A stretch of DNA of 63,056 nucleotides, filler included, from Sluysia triapertura (GCA_046118255.1; 4 parts of 4 records of this genome joined end to end with filler, not necessarily neighbours in it); one strand, 5' to 3'. Shown: positions 20,639-36,633, numbered from the whole stretch's first letter. Translations and numbers: made by a program. Notes: generated by a model not told the origin, from the sequence alone.

Positions 20639-21110
20639 AACATAGATTTTAACAATGGTTTGTTGTACTCAATTTCATATAGAAAAGTGAAAAAATTACA
20701 ATTAATAATTAATCACACAGCAAGACTAATTCTTAATGAATTGCATTGTTTGCCAATAAAAGCAAGAATAGAATTCAAAATCATGACAATAATTCACAAA
20801 TGCTTATATTACGGAAGTCATGAATAACTCTTAGAAATAATAAAAATTTGGAAACCAAGATGAATATTTCAATGAGACATAATAATAATCAATACAGAAT
20901 CCACAGTGATAATAAGAGTTAGATGATAGATTGTATACCGTTTATGTTTCAAAAATATACAACCAGTTACCAGAAGATTATGAAATATTTAAAAAAAGAC
21001 AAAATTCCTTCTGTTTCAGAAATATTATGGTGAATGATTTACTTTAAGCGCTTCTGAGTACTTACTTCGTAGTTTGTATGAGCGCAATATAAATTAACAT
21101 ATTACTATTA
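20639..21110 (+). mobile_element. L2-clade LINE 3' fragment
   Basis: It reads NGLLYSISYRKVKKLQLIINHTARLI..LNELHCLPIKARIEFKIMTIIHKCLYYGS and shares its 3' tail with the 16190 copy. Confidence 0.85.
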
Positions 21111-22487
21111 AAAAGTAGTTCAATAAAAATGGTGGTAATACATTTTCAAATAGATATTATCGTTGTGTGATTGTTTAGAATTACATTTTCTTAATTTCTT
21201 TGTCCCACTGTGCTGATCTTAATCGAATATAAGCAAAAATATTAACCATAACTAATTCACTTTTTATTATAAGTAGTACAAATTTGAATAAAAATTCATT
21301 AACTATTATTAATAACATATACACAAACATTTATATATATACAGAGATTATTTTTTTCTCCTATTTTTTTGTTTGGTTAGATCTATCTCTATCTATTTTA
21401 TATAGTACAGTCGTTTAGAAAAATATGATTAAAAACAGTGCCTCTGGTATCAACATATTGCTACTTTTTTAAAAAAAAATAAAATTACTTTGATCATCAT
21501 TTTTGGTATAATCCAATATCGTGTACAATATGGTGTATTTATTTTATTAGTTTTTATATGAATTTGTGTGTGTATGTGCATATAAACAATTTTCACTACG
21601 CTAATCTGGTAATGTATTTCTAAAACGTTTTTCGCTAAATTTAATAATTATACTTATAATTATTATTCTCATAATAATAAACTTCATAAAACGGACTGAT
21701 CGAGAATCAAATTCGGGACCTCTATCAATTATTATACTAAATGGCACTTTAGGTCTGTATCCCAACCAAATGTAAGGTTTTGAGTGCTCCGGGGAAAACA
21801 AAATAGCAAAGAAAAGGCGAAAAATCAAAATTACCCAATAAAAGATGTATTAATTTAAAAAATAATACAATAGTTATTTACTTACAAGCGATACAACATA
21901 TGGAATAATATAACGACGAAGGAGCTATTTCTGTTGCATAAAAGACTTTTTGTAATGCTATTGGTCAAAACTTCAATAACACAGTTAATTAAATTAATGT
22001 TTTTTTGAAAATCAGTTTGTAAACAGTTTACAATATTAATATAATTTTTATATGGTATTATCAAAGAATAAAAATTTTATTGCTTGGTATAAAAATCGAT
22101 GACTCATGAAATAAATGATCGATTTTAATTTATACAATCTAAAAAAATATTTTATTTTTATAGTTTTTTGCTCGGCTCACCTGCCCCTTTATTCGGCTTT
22201 GATCGCAATATATATCTCATCCAATTCAATTATGCTTGACCTCAAACATCTTGTGGGCTCACCAAATGTTAGACTTGAATGTTAACCAATGATTGCCCAT
22301 AATTAATTTTGCAATTATTCGCTAGCAGTTTCTCGAAGACACAGTACTAGTGTCAAGCACGGACTTAATCTACAAAAATACGTCATCATTTTCAAGTCTC
22401 TTCGCTTAAACTCTATCATCATATGCCACAAAATAATGTCTTTCAAATGATATTAGCTATCTGGAACAATTATTTTAATTATAAACA

Positions 22488-23349
22488 TATGGTGGCCAAC
22501 TTTATCACTTAAAATATTAACTCATTTCATCACAATAAAAAAATCACATTTTTGTAACATTTAAGCTATTATTTCTTCAAAAATCATTAAAATTGTAAAT
22601 CCAAATTTAAATGCAAAGGTAATTAACTAAATGGAATTACTTTTAACACCTTTAGCTATTGCAATACTTTTTATCATTTTCCTTATAATTTTATTTTCTT
22701 CCTTCCTTTTTTAATAACGAATTCTAAGTTCATTAATCACATATTGTGTATTCATTAGCCACATTTCTACTCGTCCAAATAGTCGCAATTACTTAAATTA
22801 TTCACATCATTCAAGCATTACTTAACCAATGATTTACTACGCTTTTCTTACTCAGATTTTAGAACAATGTAATCACACAGATTTAGATAGTAATTCAGAG
22901 TTTAATTATAAATCACTTAAATCTATATCTTTAAGACGAGTTAATTTTAAAATCTTCAAGCATTCATTCTATTCATTTTCATTGCATCACTACTCTTTAT
23001 ATTGTTATGAATATGATCTTTTTAATGCTACTCAAGAACAAAATTAGGTTTAAGAATAAAGAAAGAAATTAATATTAATTAAAATTATTTAAGGAAAAGT
23101 TGTATTTCAATCAGTTATGTCTTTTATATGTTTATTTTTATTTCATTTTATTATTATTATTATTATCATTAGTACACCTTTATTATTGTTAATTTTGATA
23201 TCATTAATTTTATAGTTGTTGCCAGATGATATAATCTGTCAATATTGACAAATTTTTAATCTGGTTTGATTTATAACTGCCAATTATTGACAGATCTCGA
23301 TAAATTAAAACCCATCATTGTTACTCTCTAATTTGCCAGAAAGTATACA
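22488..23349 (+). mobile_element. Cassette copy A (LTR-like or promoter cassette with hairpin)
   Basis: It starts TATGGTGGCCAAC, and the first ~200 bp align with 27320+ and with the reverse complement of 39900-40131. A (TAT)n tract lies at ~23140-23190 and a hairpin at 23234-23295. It ends ...GTATACA followed by TTGG. Confidence 0.65.
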
Positions 23350-23512
23350 TTGGTTTTAAAACAATTAATTTAATAATTTTTTAAATCATTAAATCGGCAA
23401 ATTTAATCTACTGACTCAGTTACTTCGATTTATCAAAGTTTATATTTACAGATTTTAAATTTAAAGTACAAAACAACCTTTTATATTCTAAGTGTTTTAC
23501 GTGAAATATAAA

Positions 23513-24312
23513 ATGCTAAACAGTCTTTACGACGATTATAATAATGATGATCATGATTATAAAGATTATTACGACGGTCATACGTACTCAAGTTCTAAAA
23601 CGTGTTGGGAATTGTCAGATGATATTAGATTGAGAAAGAAATTCTTCAATCAATTAAATACAAAGCGAAGTGCTGGTATTAAAGATAGTTATACAGACTT
23701 ACGTGACTCTATTCCAACGATGCATCGTCTTCAATTATGTTACTAAAAGCTGTTGAATATCTAGATGAGTTAAGTAAAAGAAGTAAAAGTATTAATTTAG
23801 AAAATAAATTCCGCTTAATGGAACAACAACTACAATATGTGGCATGTCAAGGCGGTTCGTTATCAACAACTAATAGTGATATTAGCAAAGCAGCAGTTTT
23901 ACCAGATGTTTCTAGTTCAAATAATATTCACGGCCATTCAGTTTCAACTGTAATGCAAACGCCTAATTTTTCTACTGAACCAATTAGTAACAAACAAGTT
24001 TATCGGCTACTAATACTCATTCCAGATCAGGTAGTGCGGCAAGTGATCATAAACACGCAAGTTATTTTTTGTACCTAAACAGTCATAATTATTCAATGAT
24101 AGATCAAGCCTTTTTAAATCAGCACTATGTATGTACGAAATTACAATAATAGGCCAATGCATAAAGTATGAAAAATCTTGTCCTTTTGACGCGGATTATA
24201 TGAATTAGTACCAATTCCTAAGGTCAATGCAGTCAATCCTTTTTGTTCACAAATTGATGAATCTGAACTTAACGTAACAATATACAAAGATTTTGTCAAA
24301 ACCTTTTCCAAA
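23513..24312 (+). pseudogene. Frameshifted gene: Max-like bHLH-ZIP fused to a C-x9-C-x6-C-x3-H zinc finger
   Basis: RKKFFNQLNTKRSAGIKDSYTDLRDSIPTM/..MLLKAVEYLDEL..LMEQQLQ resembles Max ([39 protein letters not shown]). Downstream it reads YLNSHNYSMIDQAF/KSALCMYEITIIGQCIKYEKSCPF/(A)RGLYEL. About 4 frameshifts are needed, and a GT-AG intron lies at 24313-24385. Confidence 0.72.
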
Positions 24313-26229
24313 GTAAATTTTAATTTTATTAAACATTTATTAGTTTTTAATTATGATGTTTACATTTTCACATTTTTATTTATAGGTTCAAATGTAGTTA
24401 TGGCAGTAGCTTATACAAGCAATTTTGGACAAAATTTTAATACATATTCCGGAGGGCTTTTTATTTTTTATTATTAATAAATTAATTAACTCATTAAATT
24501 CTTTAATTAAATTATTAAACAAATTTACAACAATGTTTAAAATTTTAATTATTTGAAAACAGACTAACAAAACTGCCTTAAGGTATTTAAACAAATAACA
24601 AAATACTAAAACAAAACCAATAAAATTTAAATCAAGTTTATTAAAACAATAAAACGTTTGTGTAAAAATATATGCAACCGTAGTTAATAGCAAAGGAATT
24701 GTTGAAGCATGAGAGCAACTGTTATTACTTATGGTATTATAATTTAGCGAAAAGTATAATAATCTTTTTAAATTACATTTACGACAACTTGATTCCCATA
24801 ATTCATTGAATGTTGTTGATAGTTTAAATAATTACAAATTTGTTCTGATTCATAATAACGTCTTAAAAATACTAAACATGCAGCTACTATTGTAACAAAT
24901 AATAATATGAACACATTATTGATTATACTGTACCATAATGGTGACGTTACTGTATAATATATTCATTTATTAATATATTTATTAATGTCGTACCAAATTC
25001 TAATTTATTTAGTTTATCGATTTTTTAATTAATCTTAATTTTTATAATTAATTTATTATATTTTCAGATTGCGATAGATATTTGAAGGATTTGCAATTAA
25101 TTTTATTTTATATATATTTGAATTCAGAACATATTTCAGACTCAACTTTATAGAATTATTATTCCAAAATATCGTTGCAAATTGGCCGAAAATAAGTGAA
25201 ATACTGTTAAGATTTTCATATGACTTACATTGCCGTAACATCACGACTTACTGTAGCTTTCTGATTGACTTTGTTCATTTTGAATTATTTCACATCTAAT
25301 TCTAGAAAGATTCATTCCATAACTTTCAAATTTTATTATTAAACAAATTCTTTAATATTAATTTTGGCTTTGTTTTACTAATATCGGTTTCTTAACATTT
25401 AAAAATGAAAATGTGACGTAAAACTAAAAATGACATTTCTCCAATTCAAATGTTTTTAAATGTCACATATGACGTATTAAATTATTAAAATTAGAATTAT
25501 TATTGATCTTGGTGTATAATTCCGATGAAAATTTTAGTAACAGATGAATATTTTTTGTTTTAATTTTAGTAATATATAAATATTTATTATTAATGTTTTT
25601 GTTGAATTATTATAAAATTTAGCAGATTTAGCAAACATACGTAATAATAGTTAATTATTAATATAATTAACAGGTATCTCAGTTATTCCAAGAGCAAGTG
25701 GCACTGTTTCAATTTGCTTTGAGGATACTTTCATAACCTATTTTTGCCTGTTCTTCTATTAAACATTTCAAATTACTTTTGCTATTGTGATGAAACTGAA
25801 TTAACGAGTACATTTCCAATTAATAAAGAACACAATAAAATGTTTCCGCATTTTCAAAATGGGTATATCTTTTAGCTTATTAGCAACATTAATTCCTTGC
25901 AATTCATAACAATAAATATTAGTTATAAAATATATAATATTGAACTGTCACTGACTTTTTGTTAATTAGATCGAATAATAAATCTTCCACTTGATTTCGA
26001 GAATCACAACTATCAATATTATTTCAACTTTATCATCGTATGATTCCCAACTGTTTCCACAAAATTTACATTTCTCTAAGTAAATTTTCAGCATCTCGTT
26101 ACTACTAAGTATAATGTGATTTTTGTTTCTTTGATTGATGGAGCTGTTTTTCTACTCGGTAAATCTGTATCATTATCAGATTGTCTATCATGACTATCAG
26201 AAACACACATACAAAAATATATAAAGAAG

Positions 26230-26433
26230 CAAAAGAATAAGAGTGATAACATGTAAGAATAATATAGTTATTATATATTTTAATATGATGATGTTAATGA
26301 ATTTATAATAACAATAACCATGATCGTGATAATTATTTACACTGAGTCAAGTAGTTTATTTAGTGTTCCGTGTATGTAAGAAATGTTCTTATGTGATGAA
26401 GTGTGTTTGTAATTTTTATATGATTTCCCTACC
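26230..26433 (-). repeat. Dispersed repeat beginning GTAGGGAAATCA (LTR-like 5' end); second copy ~59000-59208
   Basis: The blocks tgagtcaagtagttt, ttatgtgatgaag and atatgatttccctac are shared by both places. Confidence 0.75.
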
Positions 26434-27319
26434 TATGTGTATTTAAGAAAATTAATAAATGTATTAAGCATTATTTTAATAAATTTGTGACTTTGGAAAT
26501 AATTATAAAATTTTCATTTAATTATAATGCCCCATAAAACACATTAAAAAGATTTAATAATGCATTTCATTATAAAACATTTCGTCATAAAACATTGAAA
26601 TTTTTTGATATTTTGTTTACATACTGTCTTTAGTAGTTAAATAAATATTATTTTCTATCGGACAAGACTGTCGTTCTAATCATATATTAAACATTAAATC
26701 AAATTTCCAAACGTTCAAATAGTTTAACATCCAAAATTATACAACTTTCGAAGTATGAAATATGATAACGAAATTCCTACTTCATTTTTATTCATAATAC
26801 CTTTTATAATTTAGCAACTAATAAATTATCGAATAAAGCAATCTTTTAAAAATAAGCCATTGAAAGAGTGGACAGGCAGTTGGGACGAGCTATGATTCGG
26901 AATAAGTCAGTGACCTTCAAGAAAAAGTAAATATTAGGGAGGTCACAACTTGCAGACATTATTGACATAGTATCTTCTCTTTTCGATATGGATTAATTGG
27001 GAATAGTAACCATGGATACAGATTTTATTACTGTCCATCTCGATCTGTGGTCCAGTAAGCCTTATATTATGTTTTTAGGATTTATCTGTATTTTCAAAGT
27101 TGACGTGAGTATTAAGTTTAAGTTTGATTCAGGATTAACCAACTTTACGTCAAGGCTATTTACATGTAATTCATCGAGAATTCTCTAATTTCACATTAAA
27201 TTTTATTTTGTGATTATTTTTACATCCAATTGGGCATTATCTAAATTGATTTCATTGATATTTATTTTAAGCTGAACATCATCTAAATTATCTTTATGAA
27301 TATTTGCGTTAAAATGAGC

Positions 27320-28029
27320 CGTGGTGGCCAACCTTACTACTTAAAACTTTAATTTAATCAATCATAATAAAAAAATCACATTGCTGTAATATTTCATCTT
27401 TCATTTCTTCAAAAATGATTAAAATTGTAAATCTATCAAAACATTTTTAAGTTCACAATTCGACAACATTAAAATCATTAATACCATCAAAAATCATTAA
27501 AATTAGATTTTAAATTTATTTTAAAACATTAAACTAAATGGAACATCTTTAACTACGTTGTTACCATCTTTAGATATTCTTTCATAAATTTTCTTCACAT
27601 TTTTAATTTATATTTAAAGAAATGTAAAAGAATTTAAAGATGTAAAGAAAAAGAATTTTAATTTTAAAGAAAGAGAAATCTATGAAGGAAAAGAATGNNN
27701 NNNNNNNNNNNNNNNNNNNNNNNNNNNNNNNNNNNNNNNNNNNNNNNNNNNNNNNNNNNNNNNNNNNNNNNNNNNNNNNNNNNNNNNNNNNNNNNNNNNN
27801 NNNNNNNNNNNNNNNNNNNNNNNNNNNNNNAAAGTATTATTATTACTATTATCATTTTATCATCATTAATTATTATTATTTACATTACTATTACCATTAT
27901 TATTACTTCAATCAATTACTGCATACTATCAAGCTCGACAGTTGCTACACAAAATCAATTTCAATACTGTCATCATTGACAGTCACTTTTGTCAAAATAG
28001 ATTAACTGTGTAGTAACAATACTACCACA
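27320..28029 (+). mobile_element. Cassette copy B (contains an N gap at 27698-27830)
   Basis: It has a CGTGGTGGCCAACC start, C/A-rich then A/G-rich tracts, a (TAT)n tract and a hairpin at 27926-27982. The end CTACCACA is an inverted match to the start. Confidence 0.65.
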
Positions 28030-28481
28030 AAAATCCTGATAATTATTGGCCAACTAATAAGATTTCATTTATTTGATGCAAAAATTATTGTTGGTACAGT
28101 AGAGGTACACAATAAATTCAGAATTAATTTTGTTTGACTTAAAAAATAATACACTTCAGTAATTGTTATTGATTTTAAAAATTTCGGGAATAAAGTGTTG
28201 AAAATGTTATCCTGCTTATTGTAAATTTCAAGATTCAAACAAACATTAACTGAATTTTATTAAAAGTTTCAGTCAATTTTTATAATTATTTTGATATCAA
28301 AAATTTTAGTAAAGAAAAGATAGTTGTCATCCTCAATTAATTTTGTTAGATTCTTTTTACCTTATTTTCTTTTAGCTCAACATCTTAAAAGGTTAAAAAG
28401 ATATTTAATATTCGTGTAAATATTGAGATTCAACATATTTATTCTATAATTAATATACCTGACTATAAAGATACATCTTAA

Positions 28482-29271
28482 ATGAGTAATCATGATTTTA
28501 AAACAGAACTGGAACTTCTAATTAAACCAGGCAAAACTATGTTCCAAATGAAAGGATTGAATTAGTTATTAATGATAGTCATGTACACGATCGTAAAAAA
28601 GTGAAAGAAATATTACATCATTTGGATTCAGACAAAGATAAAATGATTAATTTATCAGCTATAGAAGTACTATATAATACTAAACCTCGTCTTTATAATG
28701 AACATATTTATTTTACTAATTTAATGGATATAATTATGATTAAACGACTTGATGATAAAGAAAGCAATCTTAAAGAATTTAAGAAGAGTTACATCAAAAA
28801 TGATGAACGTCTTAAAGAAGTAAATGCTGTAATCGAACATATTGATGTTTCACCCAACATAATATCAAATAAATATCTGAAATACGATTTTGATCAAGAT
28901 CACTACAAAACCGCACTATGTTTGTTTGGTACAACTAATTTAGGTATATGCCTCATATATGGCCGACTATGCCCATATGCCCACAACGTACCATAATTAT
29001 GTTATCAATCTTTCAATAACGTCAATTCTAATATCGACTTAGATCGCACTGACAAGCTACTAACTTCATTGGAAACTAATTCAAGCAATTCAAATCATCC
29101 AATTGATAACGGCATGAGTTGTGGTAATCATAATGATCATTTAACTATGATAAATAACGAATCAAAATTAGAAGTAAATTTTTCTTATATTGAATTTTTA
29201 GTCTAACGATATTTCTGTATTTTTATTAGGATTATTTGGCACTATGCGACCTGTGGTATGCCAAAATGTAA
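28482..29271 (+). pseudogene. Cassette-associated CCCH zinc-finger gene (one frameshift, one in-frame TAA, intron 29174-29229)
   Basis: It reads MSNHDFKTELELLIKPGKT.../..DQDHYKTALCLFGTTNLGICLIYGRLCPYAHNVP*LCYQ.., and the frame stays open to gaa|GTAAAT. The YKTxLC lead-in is typical of TIS11-type CCCH fingers. Confidence 0.7.
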
Positions 29272-30959
29272 GCCATCCACCAATTTTTTTGATAAACTGA
29301 CATTTAGTAATGATTTGATAACTTTAATTCATTTTATAACTAATAAAAATCTCAGTCTTATTTAGTATATTTTCATTTTAAAAGGATTGTAATAAATAAA
29401 TTGTATTTAATAAATAAATAAATTTTATCTTATGCAATTAATAAAAGAAAGTAATAAAATTTTAATCTTGGTATTTATACAAATAATTAAATTAATTAAC
29501 AATTTAATTAAATATAAAATAATCAATCATTTTACATTTAAAATAATAACATCCTATATTTTTCCAAATTAACTTGATTTTACCTAGAAAGCATTCTTAT
29601 TCTTATGATAGTACTTAAAGTCTTTGAATATAATTATGAACTTAAAATCTCAGTGCAATAAAATTTATATTTATGCAACTTAAAGCCGACAAACTTTATT
29701 GATAAATTTTATATAATAATTTTGGGTTGCCAAAGCACAAAAAGAATAAAATAACAAGCATTTATTGTAAAAATTGTACGTTGAAGAAAAAAAATAAAAA
29801 TTTTATGTTGAAATTTAAAATAAGCTTTATTAACGTCTTTAAATTTAGCGTGCCACAAACCTCTTTAATAGCAGAATCAGAATGTTGACCCTTCCTAATT
29901 TTCGAAAACTCGAATACTTCATTTAAAATCCGATGATTCTCGGTTAATATAGTTAAACAGTTTCTTATGCATAAAAAAATCTTGACATTGTCATGAAGAG
30001 TAGTACTAAATCGTTTTCATAATTATTCATCTTTGACTCTTTAACAGCACAAATCTTAATCCAAAAATGCCACCTTTTAATGTTTAAAATTCATTCAATA
30101 ACCGTATTTTAAAATAACTATCTTTTTATTAAAAGTTTCTGATTGTAAATAAATGAATCTTCATAATTTGAAGTTTCTAATATGTAATTATTATGAATGA
30201 ATGCTGATGAATTACAAATATTTTCTAAGTTATTTGTCAATGCATCTTCAATATTAAGTTCCCAGACTAATGCACATAATTGGTGGTATTACACATCTAT
30301 TTCTAATACTTCAGTTAGCATATATTAAGTAAAATGATTTAATGTCGAGCCTTTATACCGATTATTACATCTGATTTAAAAATTCCACAAAATCTGCCGA
30401 ACACATTTCCTATAATATTGAGAAATCACTTTTATTCATAGAATCAATGTCATTAAATTTTATTCCTAATTACATAATTTCTCAACTTTTAACAAAAAAT
30501 ATAAAAATTAATATAATAATATTAATAAAAACATTATTAAAACTTATAAATAAATATTAATTTGCTTTAAAATGTATTAAAAATTTCTCTTTTTATTAAT
30601 ACGTGATTATGTTTTTTTAATTTACTATTTTTTAAATTTCTAATAAACAAAATAATGACTTGAAAAAAAACAAATAAAATAATTATAATTACAATACAAA
30701 TTTTAAATCATTAAATTAATAAATAAAATTAATTATTTAAAATCTTTTAAAAAATAATTTAATTTTATTAAATTTGTTATAAATTAATTTAATTTAATAT
30801 TATATAATTAATATAGATGTCGAATGTAAAGTGTAAAAGTGTAAAAGAGAGAGTAAAATGATAAATAATTATTGTTTAATAGATTTGTGTTCATAATGGT
30901 GTAAGAAGGTATTGAATTAATATAGATTATTTATTTCATTAAGAGTGTTTTGTATAGAA

Positions 30960-31600
30960 TCTGCTGATATAGCGGTACAATCATGATATAAACATCATAA
31001 GCTAAGCAGGCGAAGAAATAATTCAAGTAAACGAAGTGTTCAATATTATGGATAGAAAATCGAATCAAGGGTTGAGTGGGTAAGCAAAATAGTGTCATGC
31101 ATGAGGGCAGCTTTGTTTCACACCAACTTTGACTGGACCAGCCAGAAGTATGAGGCTCCACTGAGAACATTTTGAGAAACCGAGATAGGTTCGGATTCAG
31201 ATTTTTGGAGAAGAAAGTGAGTGGATAGGTTTGGGTTCTTTGGCTCAGCAAGTTATTTCTTGCCTTTGGAGTTTCTATACACCAAAGAAGAATTTCGTAG
31301 CAATTTGAATTTTTACATTAACGATACATTATGTGTTAGATAAATATGATAAAAAGCCTCAATGGCGTAATAGCAAACATAGTAGAATTCAGGAGGAAAT
31401 TGAAAATTTAAACGGTGTTTATGTCATCAGAAAAATAAATAAGTGGGTTTGGAAATATCATCTGAAGAAGCCGTACCAAGTTTGAGATTACATCTGGTCA
31501 CAAGATTTCTGACTTTATGAAGAGATTTAAGTTCATACCTCAGTTAAGAGGTAGATTTCGAAGAATCAGAGTCTTAAGAGTGCGGAGTAGGTATACAAAA
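30960..31600 (-). mobile_element. Highly degenerate non-LTR retrotransposon (CR1/L2-type RT C-terminal region)
   Basis: Frameshifted pieces LLQKS*IRTYL..SGASYFWL..NKAA resemble the YKSLIRPxLEY..WSGA..QNKAA pattern of these LINEs. Confidence 0.4.
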
Positions 31601-34600
31601 TATAAGATCAGAAGACATTTAAGACATTAATGTTTAATTCCATTTTTTTATATGCTAAACATTTTTGAATTATTGTATAATTTAACTTTATTAAAAGCAA
31701 GACTGTATAATTTATAAAAATTTTTTCTTTCTCAGATTATTGAAACTGATACAATTTCTTTTCTGTTTGTATAACAATCAACTATAGAAATTTTTGGATT
31801 TGTAGAATTTTTATCTTGAAACTGTTTGTTTATTTAATTATCATTTTCTATTATCGTTATAAAATGTTTAAAATTGGACTTCTCCACTATATATAAAATA
31901 TTTCACCATTATATTCAAATTTATTAATCAATTAATCAAATTAATTAGCTAAATTTATTTGTTATTCCTGTATTTTAGGAATATTTTAAATTAGTCTTAA
32001 AATTTTCATATAATTTTTTGAATTTAAATTATTGAAATCAAATCAAAACAATATTTTAATTATGAAAATAATTATAATAATAATAAGATCGAATATTATG
32101 TTTAGCAACATTTACAGGTTTTTTGTTTTCTCCCCATTTTATTTAAATTATGTGCAACTTGCTCTCCTAAAATTATAAACTAGGAAAATGCCTGGTTAAT
32201 CAATTTATTAAACTTTAATTAATTTCGTCTCATTTATTTTAAGAAAACAAAATTTTTATCACAACTATTAAATAACTAAAATGTTTATCTATTTATTTTG
32301 TTTTATTATTAAAACACCTCTCCATTTGATCTTTTTTGACATACAACTTATACCTTTTTAATTTCCTAATATCTTTTATCATCTCACGTGACGTTTTGTA
32401 TTTGTAAAGAAAATATATAATGTCATATGTGTGCTCTCTTACTCGTGCATACTTTTGTTTATGCACAATTTCATTGGATAATTATTATGTAATTATTTAG
32501 ATTGCACTATGTTCCTTTCATTAAATTGAATTTGTTGCCAAAAGTGATATTTCTATTAATTACATTTATGTTATTTTCTCTAAATACATGTATTATCAAT
32601 TTATTTAAATGCGTCGTTTATTTTTACAAATGCTTAATGTGTATCTAAAATTAAAAACTAGCGAAGTTGACTAATACTTCTATATTTCAATAAAATGGGT
32701 TTGATTAATAACACGGCATTTCAAAATAGCGGTTTAATCGAAGAAAACCACTGAAAATAAAGAAGTGGTTATAGATATCTTTTCTACTAATCTACCATCT
32801 TTTTGCAACTGGTATTTACTGTTCTTACAGTATATAACCAAAGTAATAGTAGATCCAATGTATAAATAGAGCTTTCAGTTTCCCTGTAACATTTGCACTT
32901 ATATTTATAAGAGCTATATGATATTGTTTATAGATTTATTAACTGGATGCTCAGAATTGGTAATATCGGTAATTAATTTTAGTTTTTGATTTTACTTAAA
33001 AATAAGTGTTTCCAATACGGTATTTTTGATTTTATCTCGAATTTCATGAATTATTTAAAAATTTAACTTAGAATATGTAAATCAAGATTTAGTTATAACA
33101 GAACGAAATCATGTATAACAGGAAAGTATTTTGAGATGATTTTGAATTTTATATTAACATTAAAAAAGAATTTAATAAGAATTTTACACTTTCAAAGTTT
33201 ATATAAGTCACTTCATTTTTATATGAAATTCATATCATTTGTCATGTTTTCTTTGTGGTGATATTAAGCAAAATAATTTTAATATTAAGTTTGTACATTG
33301 AAAATATATTTTGTAAAAAGTGTTCTAGAGGATTTGTACATTTTCAAAACGGAGTACGAAAGTAATAATGAAAGTTTACATTAAAACGTAAAAATTCAAA
33401 GAATTGGCGAAGTCACCTTCACTGTCACTTTACATTACTGTTACTTTTAATATTAGGTTCAGTTTTATATAGCTATGTTTAAACCTTAAAATCGAAATCT
33501 CAGATTTATTTGTAGTACCTAAAAAGTACTTTATGGATCAAAACACTTTTGAATTATTTGTAATTGTTTGTAATTATTTGTAATTAAATAAAATTTTAAT
33601 TTGATATAGCTTTGGAAGTGAGAATTATGATTATATTGTCAATAATTAAATACTCTGTTGGTATATTTGAAATAATTCGAGATTTTAATTAAACTAATTT
33701 TTGATTTTATAATATTTCTAAAATTTAAATAACAATAAAAATGTTTAAATTATTCTTTTTGATATATGAAATGTATAAGTTATATACGAAATAATATAAT
33801 ATTCGCTTAATGTTAGTACGTACAAGTTAATGTGAATAAAAACATTAATTGAGTAAATAACTCTAGCAAGTAGCTTTTTTCCACTGTATTTTGATACAAA
33901 AGTTTTGTATTACTTTTTTGCAAAAATAGTTTTCAATGCATGAAAATTTATTCGTAAAATTCATTGAAAAGTTGTTAATAAGTACACGAACTAAACCCAG
34001 GACAGAATATAACCTACTTAGTGGAAATTAATAATTATAATAATAATAATTATTATTATTACTATTATTATCAAAATTATAAGTGAATATAAAATTAGTC
34101 ATGTTAGTGTTTTTGCATGTCATGTTTTTATAAATTATATTTTGAGCTTGCAATGTTTGACTTTCATTTTTCTTTTCTTTATTACACAATAATTATATAT
34201 ACTGTGGAAATATCATTAATATCACTAGATTATTTTATATTTTTAATATAAATGTTAATAAAAAATCTCGTATTTTGTCGTAATTACATATATATTATAT
34301 TAAGAATTTGTGTTTAGATAGATTATCACAACAATTTTCAAGAAATATAATAATAATAAAAATAATAATATAATATTTTGTTTTGTAAAATAATTTTAAA
34401 CATAATACTCATTTTTAAAAAATAATAATGTTCAAAAAATTACTCAGATTACAATGCTTTAGTATCAATTTAAAATGAAATTACATACATTTAATTTAAA
34501 TTCAAAACTTAATAACAAGTAACAATCAAATTTAAATTAGATTTGTATAAATAATCATTTTAAAGTAAGGTTCAATAAAGACAATATGAAATTAAAATTT

Positions 34601-34899
34601 ATAAACACCAAACCTTACTATTATAGTTAAAAAATTATCTTAAAATAGGAATTAATATTAAGAATATGAAATCAAACTTTAACAGCATAAAACTCGATCA
34701 AAATGTATAAAATATAAACAGCGTTCAAACATATTCAAATTTTGTAAAGAACAACATAAATTAATTTTAAATTGTTACAATAATAATTATTATTATAATC
34801 ATAATAATAATTTATATCGCTCTAATATCTACTCAAAAGCGTTTAAAATAAATTATACACTATAATATTTCTGAAGCAGTAATATTTTATAATCTTCCA

Positions 34900-36110
34900 G
34901 TAATTTAACTTTTTCTTGTAAATTTTGAAACGTAAACGATATATTACTTATCATCTAGCTTATTATCAATGTGGATTCTGTATAAATGATTAAATCTTAA
35001 TAATATATTCATTTTGGTTTCAGATTTTTATTATTTTCAAGAAATATTTAGGACTTACATATTATAAGCATTTATAAATTAAAGTCAAAATTTTGAATTA
35101 TATTGGTTACTTCTGAAAAATAACTTTAACGAAATCATAAACAATTAATTTAAAAACAATATTTTTAGTCTAAGGGCCATTAATAAAACAATATACGTGA
35201 GTTAACAAAATTAGACGGTAATTCATATAAATTATACTTCGATATTATTAAGGCTAATAAGTTAGGATTATTTGTAAAATGTTGTTAATATTCGACAATA
35301 TTACGAGTAGACAAATTTAATTCAGTAACTCTTTGCATACTTATAAAATTTTTTGGAATTTCTTTAACAAAATTATATTATACGTATAGTATTTTTATAT
35401 ACATATAAATTAATTCAGATGGTATTTTTAAAACACTTGTAAATTTAATAATTTTAGCAACTGTGATGGAAAATTCATTAATTTATAATGTGATAAATCA
35501 AAATTAACCATCCTGCAATTTTCGTAAATCGTACTTTCTATGAATCCTAATTTATTATTAAAGAGTTCACAGGTAAACGAGTCGAAATGTTACTAATATA
35601 ATTTAACATTTAAAATGTTATTTATGTAATGTCAAAATTGTGTGAATTATTCGGAAAAATATTGAAATGTACAGCACTGCAATGAAATTGTATTGATTTA
35701 TTACATTACTTAAAATTTCATCAAAAAATTTCACTTTATAAGAACTAATATATAAATAATCTATTGCAGCTAAATTAAATAAACTTGGATTAATTTCTTT
35801 GAAGTTATTATTAAACATGTTTAGATAATTTAGCTTAAATAAACTGTACATTTCAGATGGTATTAATTCTAATTTATTGCGAGATAAATTTAATATTATC
35901 AAAAAGTGAATAAAATAAAGATCTAACAAGTGTTATTAAATAAATTTTACATAAAATAGCTTCTTAAAGTCAGTTAAAATAATTAAATAACTTGGAATAT
36001 TTTCCAATTTGAAATTAAAAAGATCCAACATTTCTAAATCACATTGTGGGAATAAGCAATCCAGAATACTTTTTGGGTTCTGTTTAGATAACATTATTCT
36101 ATTTTCGTAA
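34900..36110 (-). pseudogene. Leucine-rich repeat protein pseudogene
   Basis: LRR units include LIILNLSRNKLELIPSEMYSLFKLNYLNMFNNNFKEINPSLFNL and LEMLDLFNFKLENIPSYL, with many stops in the flanking repeats. Confidence 0.7.
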
Positions 36111-36411
36111 TATATAAGAGGGATTAATCACTTAACCAGTAAATTCATTTATTTATTTTTTAATCGATACTTTTGTTAAGCATTAATATTATTTAATATT
36201 TTGATAATTATAACATAATAATCATAAATATAAATAATAATAGTAATAGAAAATAATAATAACAATAATAATAGGAATAATAAAATAATAATATTAATAA
36301 CAATAACAATAATATAATCAACATAAAAATAATAAGAATAAATATTACAATAGTATTAAATATAAATGATAATAATAATAATACAAATAATAAAATCTGA
36401 AGTTTTATATA

Positions 36412-36633
36412 CAGTAGACTCCCGTATAACGCGAGTTTATAAAGTGCGACGACTTTATTCATATAACGCGATTCCTGTATAACGCGGTATAGAATAAAAT
36501 ACGGGAATTTCCCTTTTAAACACTGTATAGATACATTTAATTTTTATGCACTCGTGTTTTTATATCTTTTTGTGTTTCAACGAAGTAGTTTATATTGCTT
36601 TGTCATTCTTTGCATTTCTATATTTAGACTTTT
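36412..36633 (+). mobile_element. Terminus of a pogo/Tigger-type DNA transposon, cut by the spacer
   Basis: TA|CAGTAGACTCCCGTATAACGCG is followed by repeated subterminal TATAACGCG motifs. Confidence 0.7.

What the first reader, a model, noticed from the sequence alone, without database searches (positions are those of the whole stretch)
23513..24385. Max-like bHLH-ZIP fused to a CCCH zinc finger
Seen: with ~4 small frameshifts, one reading path runs from an acidic N-terminus through a Max-like bHLH-ZIP and a Ser/Thr linker to KSALC-x9-C-x6-CPF(A)RGLYEL. Established: Max is the obligate dimer partner of Myc/Mxd/Mnt and has no CCCH finger, while CCCH fingers with a YKTxLC lead-in typically bind RNA. 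The basic region lacks the E-box-reading His and Glu (FNQLNTKR versus HNALERKR). Inference: a captured Max domain was grafted onto the family backbone and, when intact, could have acted as a non-E-box-binding decoy for Myc-network partners. I know of no such domain combination.
Basis: partly seen in the sequence, partly recalled or inferred. Interest (0 to 1): 0.75.

Follow-up and report, generated by a model that had tools for sequence, protein, structure and literature searches.

The report
Dead Max-like plus CCCH gene relic
This is a broken, non-functional gene copy in a very AT-rich eukaryotic genome that seems once to have joined a Max-like helix-loop-helix domain to a CCCH zinc finger, so it is a curiosity of gene decay and not a working regulator.

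Summary
One stop-free path runs from the ATG at 23513 to 24313 with exactly four frame switches, against about 13 for other windows and shuffles. The basic region plus helix 1 matches only Max among solved structures (E 0.008-0.03). A helix-2-like motif follows 21 nt later in another frame. A C-x9-C-x6-C finger lies about 270 nt further on and is homologous to an intact finger 4.8 kb downstream (E 5e-7).

- Pfam HLH hits neither half.
- The helix 2/zipper half has no Max match of its own.
- The zipper heptads are irregular.
- Base-contact residues H28, E32 and R36 are F, N and S.

The gene is dead: four net -1 frameshifts, a shortened loop, and the finger's His replaced by Arg. Codon-position periodicity continues through the Ser/Thr linker, which favours one former ORF over two neighbouring relics. 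No relative of the N-terminal half was found among 1.84 billion representative proteins, and word searches and exact look-ups were blank.

Best reading: a decayed chimeric, probably retro-derived, pseudogene of a local CCCH family. The Myc-network decoy idea is untestable here. Interest is low to moderate.

The parts
23513..23623 (+). ATG and acidic Asp/Tyr/Asn-rich N-terminus (frame 0)
   Evidence: The open frame starts at 23492 and the first ATG is at 23513. Coding periodicity is present.
23624..23671 (+). Degenerate basic region. Max H28, E32 and R36 are replaced by F, N and S; R35 is kept.
   Evidence: Alignment. Residue roles come from PMC11729911.
23672..23716 (+). Helix 1 (IKDSY.DLRDSIP), the most Max-like stretch
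   Evidence: only Max chains match, E 0.008-0.03. The generic helix-1 pattern occurs once in the piece, against 0.021 expected.
23717..23736 (+). Loop remnant with frameshift 1 (frame 0 to frame 2, net -1). The loop is about 4 codons shorter than in Max and lacks the Lys that starts helix 2.
   Evidence: Helix 1's Pro and the start of the helix-2 motif lie 23 nt apart, which is not a multiple of 3.
23722..23772 (+). Helix 2 (frame 2), ASSS IMLLKAVEYLDEL
   Evidence: The generic helix-2 pattern occurs once in the piece, against 0.014 expected. The PROSITE HLH pattern, recalled from memory, fits with one mismatch. This piece has no PDB Max hit of its own.
23773..23850 (+). Short helical or coiled-coil stretch where a zipper would sit. 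The heptads are irregular.
   Evidence: PDB hits are generic helical proteins. The heptad reading is by eye.
23851..24112 (+). Ser/Thr-rich linker. Frameshift 2 (frame 2 to 1) lies within 23991-24075 and frameshift 3 (frame 1 to 0) within 24089-24112. Both are net -1.
24113..24207 (+). CCCH-type finger relic: FKSALC-x9-C-x6-CPF, then frameshift 4 (net -1, within 24190-24205), then Arg where the zinc-binding His should be, then GLYEL
   Evidence: PF25427 E 1.1e-4. BLASTP against the paralogue gives E 5e-7. Codon-by-codon comparison with 28964-28999 was done by eye on the sequences.
24208..24313 (+). Tail of the first exon (frame 2), with no detectable second finger
   Evidence: Searches show no similarity to the paralogue's tail. 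Coding periodicity is present.
24314..24385 (+). Candidate 72-nt intron (GTAAAT...TTTATAG). The paralogue has a similar candidate about 57 nt long, from 29176.
   Evidence: Read directly. The sequence downstream of it is not conserved between the copies, so this is unproven.
28526..29203 (+). Paralogue: unrelated N-terminal region, intact YKTALC-x9-C-x6-C-x3-H finger, then an in-frame TAA at the position of the conserved Glu of HGxxEL
   Evidence: (PF25427 30.4 bits, gathering score 31.1)

Best explanation
23513-24313 is the decayed first exon of a once continuous, lineage-specific chimeric gene in a very AT-rich (23% GC) eukaryote. An intronless, probably retro-derived, Max-like HLH domain stood at the N-terminus. 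A Ser/Thr-rich linker followed, then a single CCCH finger of a local gene family.

The copy is now dead. It carries four net -1 frameshifts and a shortened HLH loop. The zinc-binding His is changed to Arg, and the Max base-contact residues are gone. It makes no product and has no present function.

Shown here: the relics, their order, the breaks, the finger homology, and the continuous coding signature.

Inferred:
- that the two domains were translated as one protein;
- that the Max part came from the host's Max by duplication or retroposition;
- that the intact ancestor could dimerise through the HLH but could not read an E-box.
For: - Only 4 frame switches are needed over 801 nt, against a mean of 13. 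None of 500 shuffles needed 4 or fewer.
- The piece has four open frames of 123 codons or more, against 0.04 expected. One of them is the helix 2 plus linker frame.
- Local GC is 0.32-0.34 against 0.23 for the piece.
Two control stretches show none of this.
- Basic region plus helix 1 hits only Max in PDB, E 0.008-0.03. Best E for seven other open-frame queries was 0.025 to 7.2 (0.14 to 7.2 leaving out the paralogue's possible EF hand, E 0.025).
- Helix-1 and helix-2 consensus patterns each occur once in the 16-kb piece. They lie on the same strand, 21 nt apart and in the right order. Expected counts are 0.021 and 0.014 per shuffled piece.
- The finger is homologous to the paralogue, E 5e-7, with the same odd spacing.
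- The paralogue's N-terminus is unrelated.
- There is no stop-poor coding relic upstream of 23389 on this strand that could be a separate N-terminus for the finger.
- A 226-codon stretch of the paralogue carries no frameshift. This argues against a high assembly indel rate.
Against: - PF00010 hits neither half.
- The helix 2/zipper half has no bHLH hit by phmmer, and its language-model neighbours were MIT domains at low score.
- The Max match is only about 18-20 bits. Corrected for the six-frame space of the piece, it is not significant alone.
- My helix patterns were written after seeing the sequence. The independent PROSITE-type pattern, allowed one mismatch, is expected 2.3 times per piece.
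- No intact relative exists in 1.84 billion representatives, so co-translation of the two domains has never been observed.
- A frame-2 stop at 24076 would give a Max-sized ORF of about 188 aa ending just before the finger. That fits the two-gene rival.
Confidence: 0.55

Rival explanations
1. These are two separate relics that merely lie next to each other. One is a Max-derived (retro)pseudogene whose own ORF ended near 24076. The other is an exon of a dead CCCH-family gene starting about 24089-24113. They were never translated together.
For: - Frame 2 runs from helix 2 to a TAA at 24076. With a single frameshift this gives an ORF of about 188 aa, a typical Max size (Max size is my own knowledge).
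- The finger's own frame opens only at 24089.
- The region is littered with dead genes and transposon fragments.
- No fused relative is known.
Against: - In 23991-24100 the codon-position pattern (T3 0.49, C2 0.30) fits frame 1 and continues the Ser/Thr region. In frame 2 the same bases read as a hydrophobic out-of-frame-like tail.
- Only about 13-37 nt would separate the two genes.
- The paralogue carries at least 87-125 codons upstream of its finger in the same exon. No such N-terminal relic for the target's finger lies upstream of 23389.
Confidence: 0.2
2. The Max resemblance is chance. The locus is simply a dead member of the lineage-specific CCCH family whose N-terminal domain is a fast-evolving helical region.
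For: - The score is only 18-20 bits over about 30 residues.
- There is no Pfam HLH hit.
- The second half looks like generic helices.
- The paralogue's N-terminus gave a comparably weak hit to something quite different, an EF hand of a CDPK at E 0.025.
- The same 77-aa piece also gave a summed spurious match to a LysM-like repeat protein.
Against: - All ten PDB hits are Max and nothing else.
- The helix-2 consensus sits exactly where a bHLH needs it. The joint chance is of the order of 1e-6 with my patterns, or about 1e-2 given the first hit with the remembered PROSITE pattern.
- The domain sits near the N-terminus behind an acidic stretch, as in Max (own knowledge).
Confidence: 0.13
3. The gene is alive and the four frameshifts are assembly indel errors.
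For: - All four shifts are net -1, the direction of systematic deletion errors (derived from the coordinates).
- Two of the windows in which a shift must lie contain T5-T6 runs.
Against: - Frameshift 1 is not in a homopolymer, and the loop is also about 4 codons short.
- The finger's His is replaced by Arg through a base substitution, not an indel.
- The paralogue shows 226 codons and the helix 2 frame 123 codons without any shift. That is unlikely at about 0.5% indel error.
- Neighbouring genes carry in-frame stops as well.
Confidence: 0.05

Closest known systems
Max (bHLH-leucine zipper partner of Myc/Mxd/Mnt)
   Same: Basic region plus helix 1 aligns only to Max among solved structures, with IKDS(F/Y)..LRDS(V/I)P conserved. 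A helix-2 motif with A..EY(I/L) follows. The domain lies near the N-terminus behind an acidic stretch.
   Different: - H28, E32 and R36 are replaced.
- The loop is about 4 residues shorter and frameshifted.
- The zipper register is not conserved.
- There is no Pfam hit.
- The region is intronless here.
- A CCCH finger follows.
- The copy is broken, so it is not a member in any functional sense.
TIS11/TTP-type and Unkempt-type CCCH zinc fingers
   Same: It has a (F/Y)K(S/T)ALC lead-in, three Cys in order, and a GxxEL motif after the His position. The best Pfam family is zf-CCCH_UNK.
   Different: - Spacing is C-x9-C-x6-C, not C-x8-C-x5-C.
- There is a single finger, not a tandem pair.
- Scores are below the gathering threshold in both copies.
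- The target has Arg for His and a frameshift inside the finger.
HLH proteins without a working basic region (Id/Emc type dominant negatives)
   Same: If the ancestor already lacked the base-contact residues, it would have dimerised without binding an E-box.
   Different: There is no sequence relation to Id. Here the loss of contact residues cannot be told apart from neutral decay in a dead gene.
Chimeric retrogenes and their pseudogenes (a retrocopy fused to a resident gene's exons)
   Same: An intronless copy of a normally intron-containing gene sits directly in front of, and in apparent reading continuity with, a domain of a local gene family. That Max genes carry introns is my own knowledge.
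   Different: The parent gene, a poly(A) trace and target-site duplications could not be looked for. The host genome is unknown, and the AT-rich flanks hide such marks.

Membership tests
bHLH superfamily (Pfam PF00010) | Significant match to the HLH profile | tested here: inconclusive
   There was no hit at E<=10 on either piece. The domain is split between two frames, and the joined read-through has no reference, so it was not run.
bHLH superfamily | Helix-1 and helix-2 consensus in order on one strand, separated by a short loop | tested here: met
   Each pattern occurs once in 16 kb, 21 nt apart. Expected counts are 0.021 and 0.014 per shuffled piece. The remembered PROSITE helix-2 pattern fits with one mismatch at the K/R position.
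Max | Closer to Max than to any other bHLH | tested here: met
   All PDB hits of the basic region plus helix 1 are Max chains. No Myc, Mad, USF, MITF or other bHLH chain appears at E<=10.
Max | E-box base-contact residues H28, E32, R35, R36 | tested here: not met
   The target has F, N, R and S at these positions (alignment). Residue roles come from PMC11729911.
Max | Leucine zipper continuous with helix 2 | tested here: inconclusive
   The stretch is helical and hydrophobic residues recur, but by eye the heptad register breaks after two turns. It has no Max hit for this part.
Max | Intact open reading frame | tested here: not met
   There is a frameshift inside the loop and three more downstream.
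CCCH zinc finger | Three Cys and one His in C-x(n)-C-x(m)-C-x3-H order | tested here: not met
   The target has C-x9-C-x6-C, then a 1-nt loss, then Arg (CGC) where the paralogue has His (CAC). The paralogue at 28919-28984 meets the feature.
zf-CCCH_UNK (PF25427) | Score at or above Pfam's gathering threshold (31.1 bits) | tested here: not met
   The target scores 22.5 bits and the paralogue 30.4 bits.
TIS11/TTP tandem zinc finger family | Two fingers C-x8-C-x5-C-x3-H, each with a YKTELC lead-in and a fixed spacer | tested here: not met
   There is one finger per copy, with x9 and x6 spacing. No second finger was found in any frame downstream.

The most novel reading that the evidence does not exclude
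The relic is a dead member of a still living, lineage-specific family in this genome. In that family a Max-derived HLH dimerisation domain without E-box contacts is translated together with an RNA-binding-type CCCH finger. Such a protein could tie Myc/Max-network partners to RNA, or titrate them.
Probability: 0.1. Interest if true: 0.6.

Novelty: new variant of a known kind. Interest (0 to 1): 0.28.

Why it matters
I know of no protein that combines a Max-type HLH with a CCCH finger, and none turned up in a search of 1.84 billion representative proteins. If the two parts really were one protein, this would be a small example of domain shuffling, probably by retroposition, creating a new transcription-factor/RNA-binding architecture that then failed.

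As it stands the locus is a pseudogene in a gene-poor, transposon-littered stretch with other dead genes. It tells us about gene birth and death in this genome, not about Myc-network biology.

Tried and rejected
- **Pfam on the five stop-free pieces.** No HLH hit; only a sub-threshold CCCH hit.
- **Word-index protein searches.** The paralogue ORF and the N-terminal piece gave nothing.
- **Exhaustive representative search with the N-terminal piece.** It returned two artefacts. One is a 1605-aa tandem-repeat protein. The other is a threefold LysM-like repeat whose weak matches add up. I rejected a LysM reading because Pfam shows no LysM hit on the piece.
- **Exact look-ups of two ORFs.** Neither is on record.
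- **ESM Atlas by features.** Low-score MIT-domain neighbours for the helix 2 part and nothing for helix 1.
- **Splicing instead of frameshifts.** By eye on the sequence, no GT...AG pair of plausible length restores the frame at any of the four breaks. Break 1 leaves no room at all.
- **Alternative genetic code.** I looked because in-frame TAA codons occur in the paralogue and in the LRR relic. Frames open under TGA-only or other reduced stop sets are no longer than in shuffles.
- **DNA-level similarity between the two CCCH loci.** About 63% over 70 bp at the finger and nothing else.
- **Similarity of tails and putative second exons.** None.
- **Rfam.** No RNA family in the piece.
- **Literature search for a bHLH+CCCH architecture.** Nothing relevant.
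- **Host organism.** Not identified. 23% GC matches, among others, the aphid parasitoid wasp genomes of PMC7257214, but that is only a compositional coincidence.
- **Left out.** The read-through joined with X at the breaks was not scored against PF00010 or a Max profile. It has no reference, and no bHLH sequences could be obtained.

Full report
**Setting**

The usable piece (20639-36633) is 23.4% GC. It carries no Rfam family. Under the standard code it holds only short open frames, apart from a few stretches that stand out against shuffles. There are four frames of 123 codons or more, where 0.04 are expected. Reduced stop sets give no longer frames than shuffles do, so there is no sign of an alternative genetic code.

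The piece looks eukaryotic and gene-poor. It contains:
- a tail resembling a LINE reverse transcriptase at 20639-20824 (resemblance judged from memory; Pfam had no hit), with an inverted second copy of the neighbouring DNA, 20767-21060 against 34830-35104;
- a decayed leucine-rich-repeat gene on the minus strand;
- two CCCH-finger loci.

I could not identify the organism.

**The observation**

From the ATG at 23513, frame 0 reads an Asp/Tyr/Asn-rich N-terminus. A stretch then aligns to the basic region and helix 1 of Max. Against all PDB chains, the only hits of this piece below E=1 are ten Max entries. They score E 0.03-0.14 for the 77-aa piece and 0.008-0.025 for a 35-aa cut. Seven other open-frame queries from the same piece gave best E-values of 0.025 to 7.2. 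Leaving out the paralogue's possible EF hand (E 0.025), the range is 0.14 to 7.2.

The score is about 18-20 bits. That would not be significant by itself once the whole six-frame space of the piece is counted.

What lifts it is the next element. A helix-2-type motif (hydrophobic-L..A.EY-hydrophobic..L) starts in frame 2, 21 nt after the helix-1 pattern ends.
- Generic helix-1 and helix-2 patterns each occur exactly once in the 16-kb piece, here, in the right order. Expected counts are 0.021 and 0.014 per shuffled piece.
- I wrote those patterns after seeing the sequence. A PROSITE HLH pattern that I recalled from memory fits with one mismatch and is expected 2.3 times per piece. Its presence in the roughly 150-nt window after helix 1 has a chance of about 1%.

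The following points count against the Max reading:
- Pfam HLH hits neither half.
- The helix 2/zipper half has no bHLH hit by phmmer.
- The heptads after helix 2 break register.

I put the bHLH reading at roughly 85%, and 'Max-like' as the best label within it.

The decisive profile test would score the read-through, joined with X at the breaks, against PF00010. It has no reference here and was left out.

**The DNA-contact residues**

In the alignment, Max H28, E32 and R36 correspond to F, N and S, while R35 is kept. PMC11729911 names H28, E32, R35 and R36 as the conserved nucleotide-contacting residues, and it measures E32N as disruptive.

**The finger**

Frame 0 at 24113-24187 reads FKSALC-x9-C-x6-CPF. 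One base is then missing, and frame 2 continues with Arg-Gly-Leu-Tyr-Glu-Leu. The ORF at 28526-28996 carries an intact YKTALC-x9-C-x6-C-x3-H. The two fingers match at E 5e-7 and share the unusual spacing.

Read codon by codon, the paralogue's GCC CAC (Ala-His) stands against the target's G-A CGC. So the target has lost one base and changed His to Arg. The paralogue in turn has TAA where the target has GAA, the Glu of the HGxxEL motif, so it is probably dead or truncated as well.

Pfam's best family is zf-CCCH_UNK, below threshold in both copies: 22.5 and 30.4 bits against a gathering score of 31.1. Neither copy has a second finger. Nothing outside the finger is shared between the two loci at the protein or DNA level.

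**One ORF or two?**

The 801 nt from 23513 to 24313 can be crossed without a stop using four frame switches. Other windows need 13 on average, and none of 500 shuffles of the target needed fewer than 8. Local GC is 0.32-0.34 against 0.23.

This includes the roughly 260-nt Ser/Thr linker.
- G is enriched at position 1 and depleted at position 3.
- T3 is near 0.5.
- C2 is high in the Ser/Thr part.
- Two control stretches show none of this.

In 23991-24100 this signature fits frame 1. Frame 2 there reads as a hydrophobic out-of-frame-like tail.

No separate N-terminal coding relic for the finger lies upstream of 23389. The paralogue has at least 87 codons in front of its finger in the same exon.

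Together this favours a single former ORF. The alternative is not excluded: a Max-sized ORF ending at the frame-2 stop at 24076, next to an unrelated finger exon.

**State of the gene**

All four shifts are net -1, derived from the coordinates. Frameshift 1 is not in a homopolymer. The distance from the helix-1 Pro to the helix-2 motif is about 4 codons shorter than in Max, so a deletion of about 13 nt would explain both the short loop and the shift (inference).

A high assembly indel rate is unlikely. The paralogue runs 226 codons and the helix 2 frame 123 codons without a shift. In addition, the His-to-Arg change is a substitution. The locus is a pseudogene.

**Relatives**

All searches for relatives came back empty:
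- The word-index searches with the paralogue ORF and the N-terminal piece found nothing.
- The exhaustive search of 1.84 billion representatives with the N-terminal piece found only two repeat artefacts and no Max-like or fused protein at E<=0.001.
- Exact look-ups were blank.

So there is no evidence for a living bHLH+CCCH family. There is equally no evidence that this genome's proteins are in those collections at all.

**Verdict**

The 'ZIP' part and the strength of the Max match were overstated.

The graft of a Max-like domain onto a local CCCH family is the best reading, at about 0.55 for a single chimeric ORF that has since died. The Myc-network decoy is a guess about an unseen ancestor. 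This is a new variant of a known kind of object, a chimeric and probably retro-derived pseudogene, and its interest is low to moderate.

Noticed in passing
window 28526-29232: The second CCCH locus has an intact finger. An in-frame TAA then falls at the conserved Glu position of HGxxEL, the open frame continues for 69 more codons, and a candidate intron of about 57 nt follows. Its N-terminal region weakly resembles an EF hand of a calcium-dependent protein kinase (E 0.025, loop DSDKDKMINLSA, imperfect). If that is real, family members carry different N-terminal domains.
   Followed up: partly
window 35431-36127, minus strand: This is a leucine-rich-repeat gene relic. The repeats stay in register across two adjacent in-frame TAA codons, at positions where neighbouring repeats have Leu-Glu, and the frame changes further on. 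It looks like another pseudogene.
   Followed up: partly
window 20639-21060 and 34830-35104: A tail resembling a LINE reverse transcriptase (motif LHCLPIK.RIEFK, resemblance from memory; Pfam had no hit) lies at the start of the piece. The overlapping and downstream DNA, 20767-21060, recurs in inverted orientation about 14 kb away at 78-81% identity.
   Followed up: no
window 24391-25333, minus strand: A stop-poor stretch includes a 147-codon hydrophobic open frame directly downstream of the finding and overlapping its putative second exon. There is no Pfam family. The only PDB hits are insect odorant receptor Orco at E 7, which is not significant.
   Followed up: partly
window 22490-22601 and 27322-27433: A direct repeat of 112 nt at 83% identity, probably a dispersed repeat.
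   Followed up: no
window 21936-21969, minus strand: FDQ*HYK matches the paralogue's FDQDHYK lead-in in 6 of 7 residues, and TKSLLC follows in another frame. This may be a third, far more decayed finger relic, or chance (E 4.3).
   Followed up: partly
window 30839-31738: A GC-richer island (0.28-0.35) has strong positive GC skew and a 128-codon open frame on the minus strand. It has no family assignment. One plus-strand frame has a weak NDUFB6 hit (E 0.008).
   Followed up: partly
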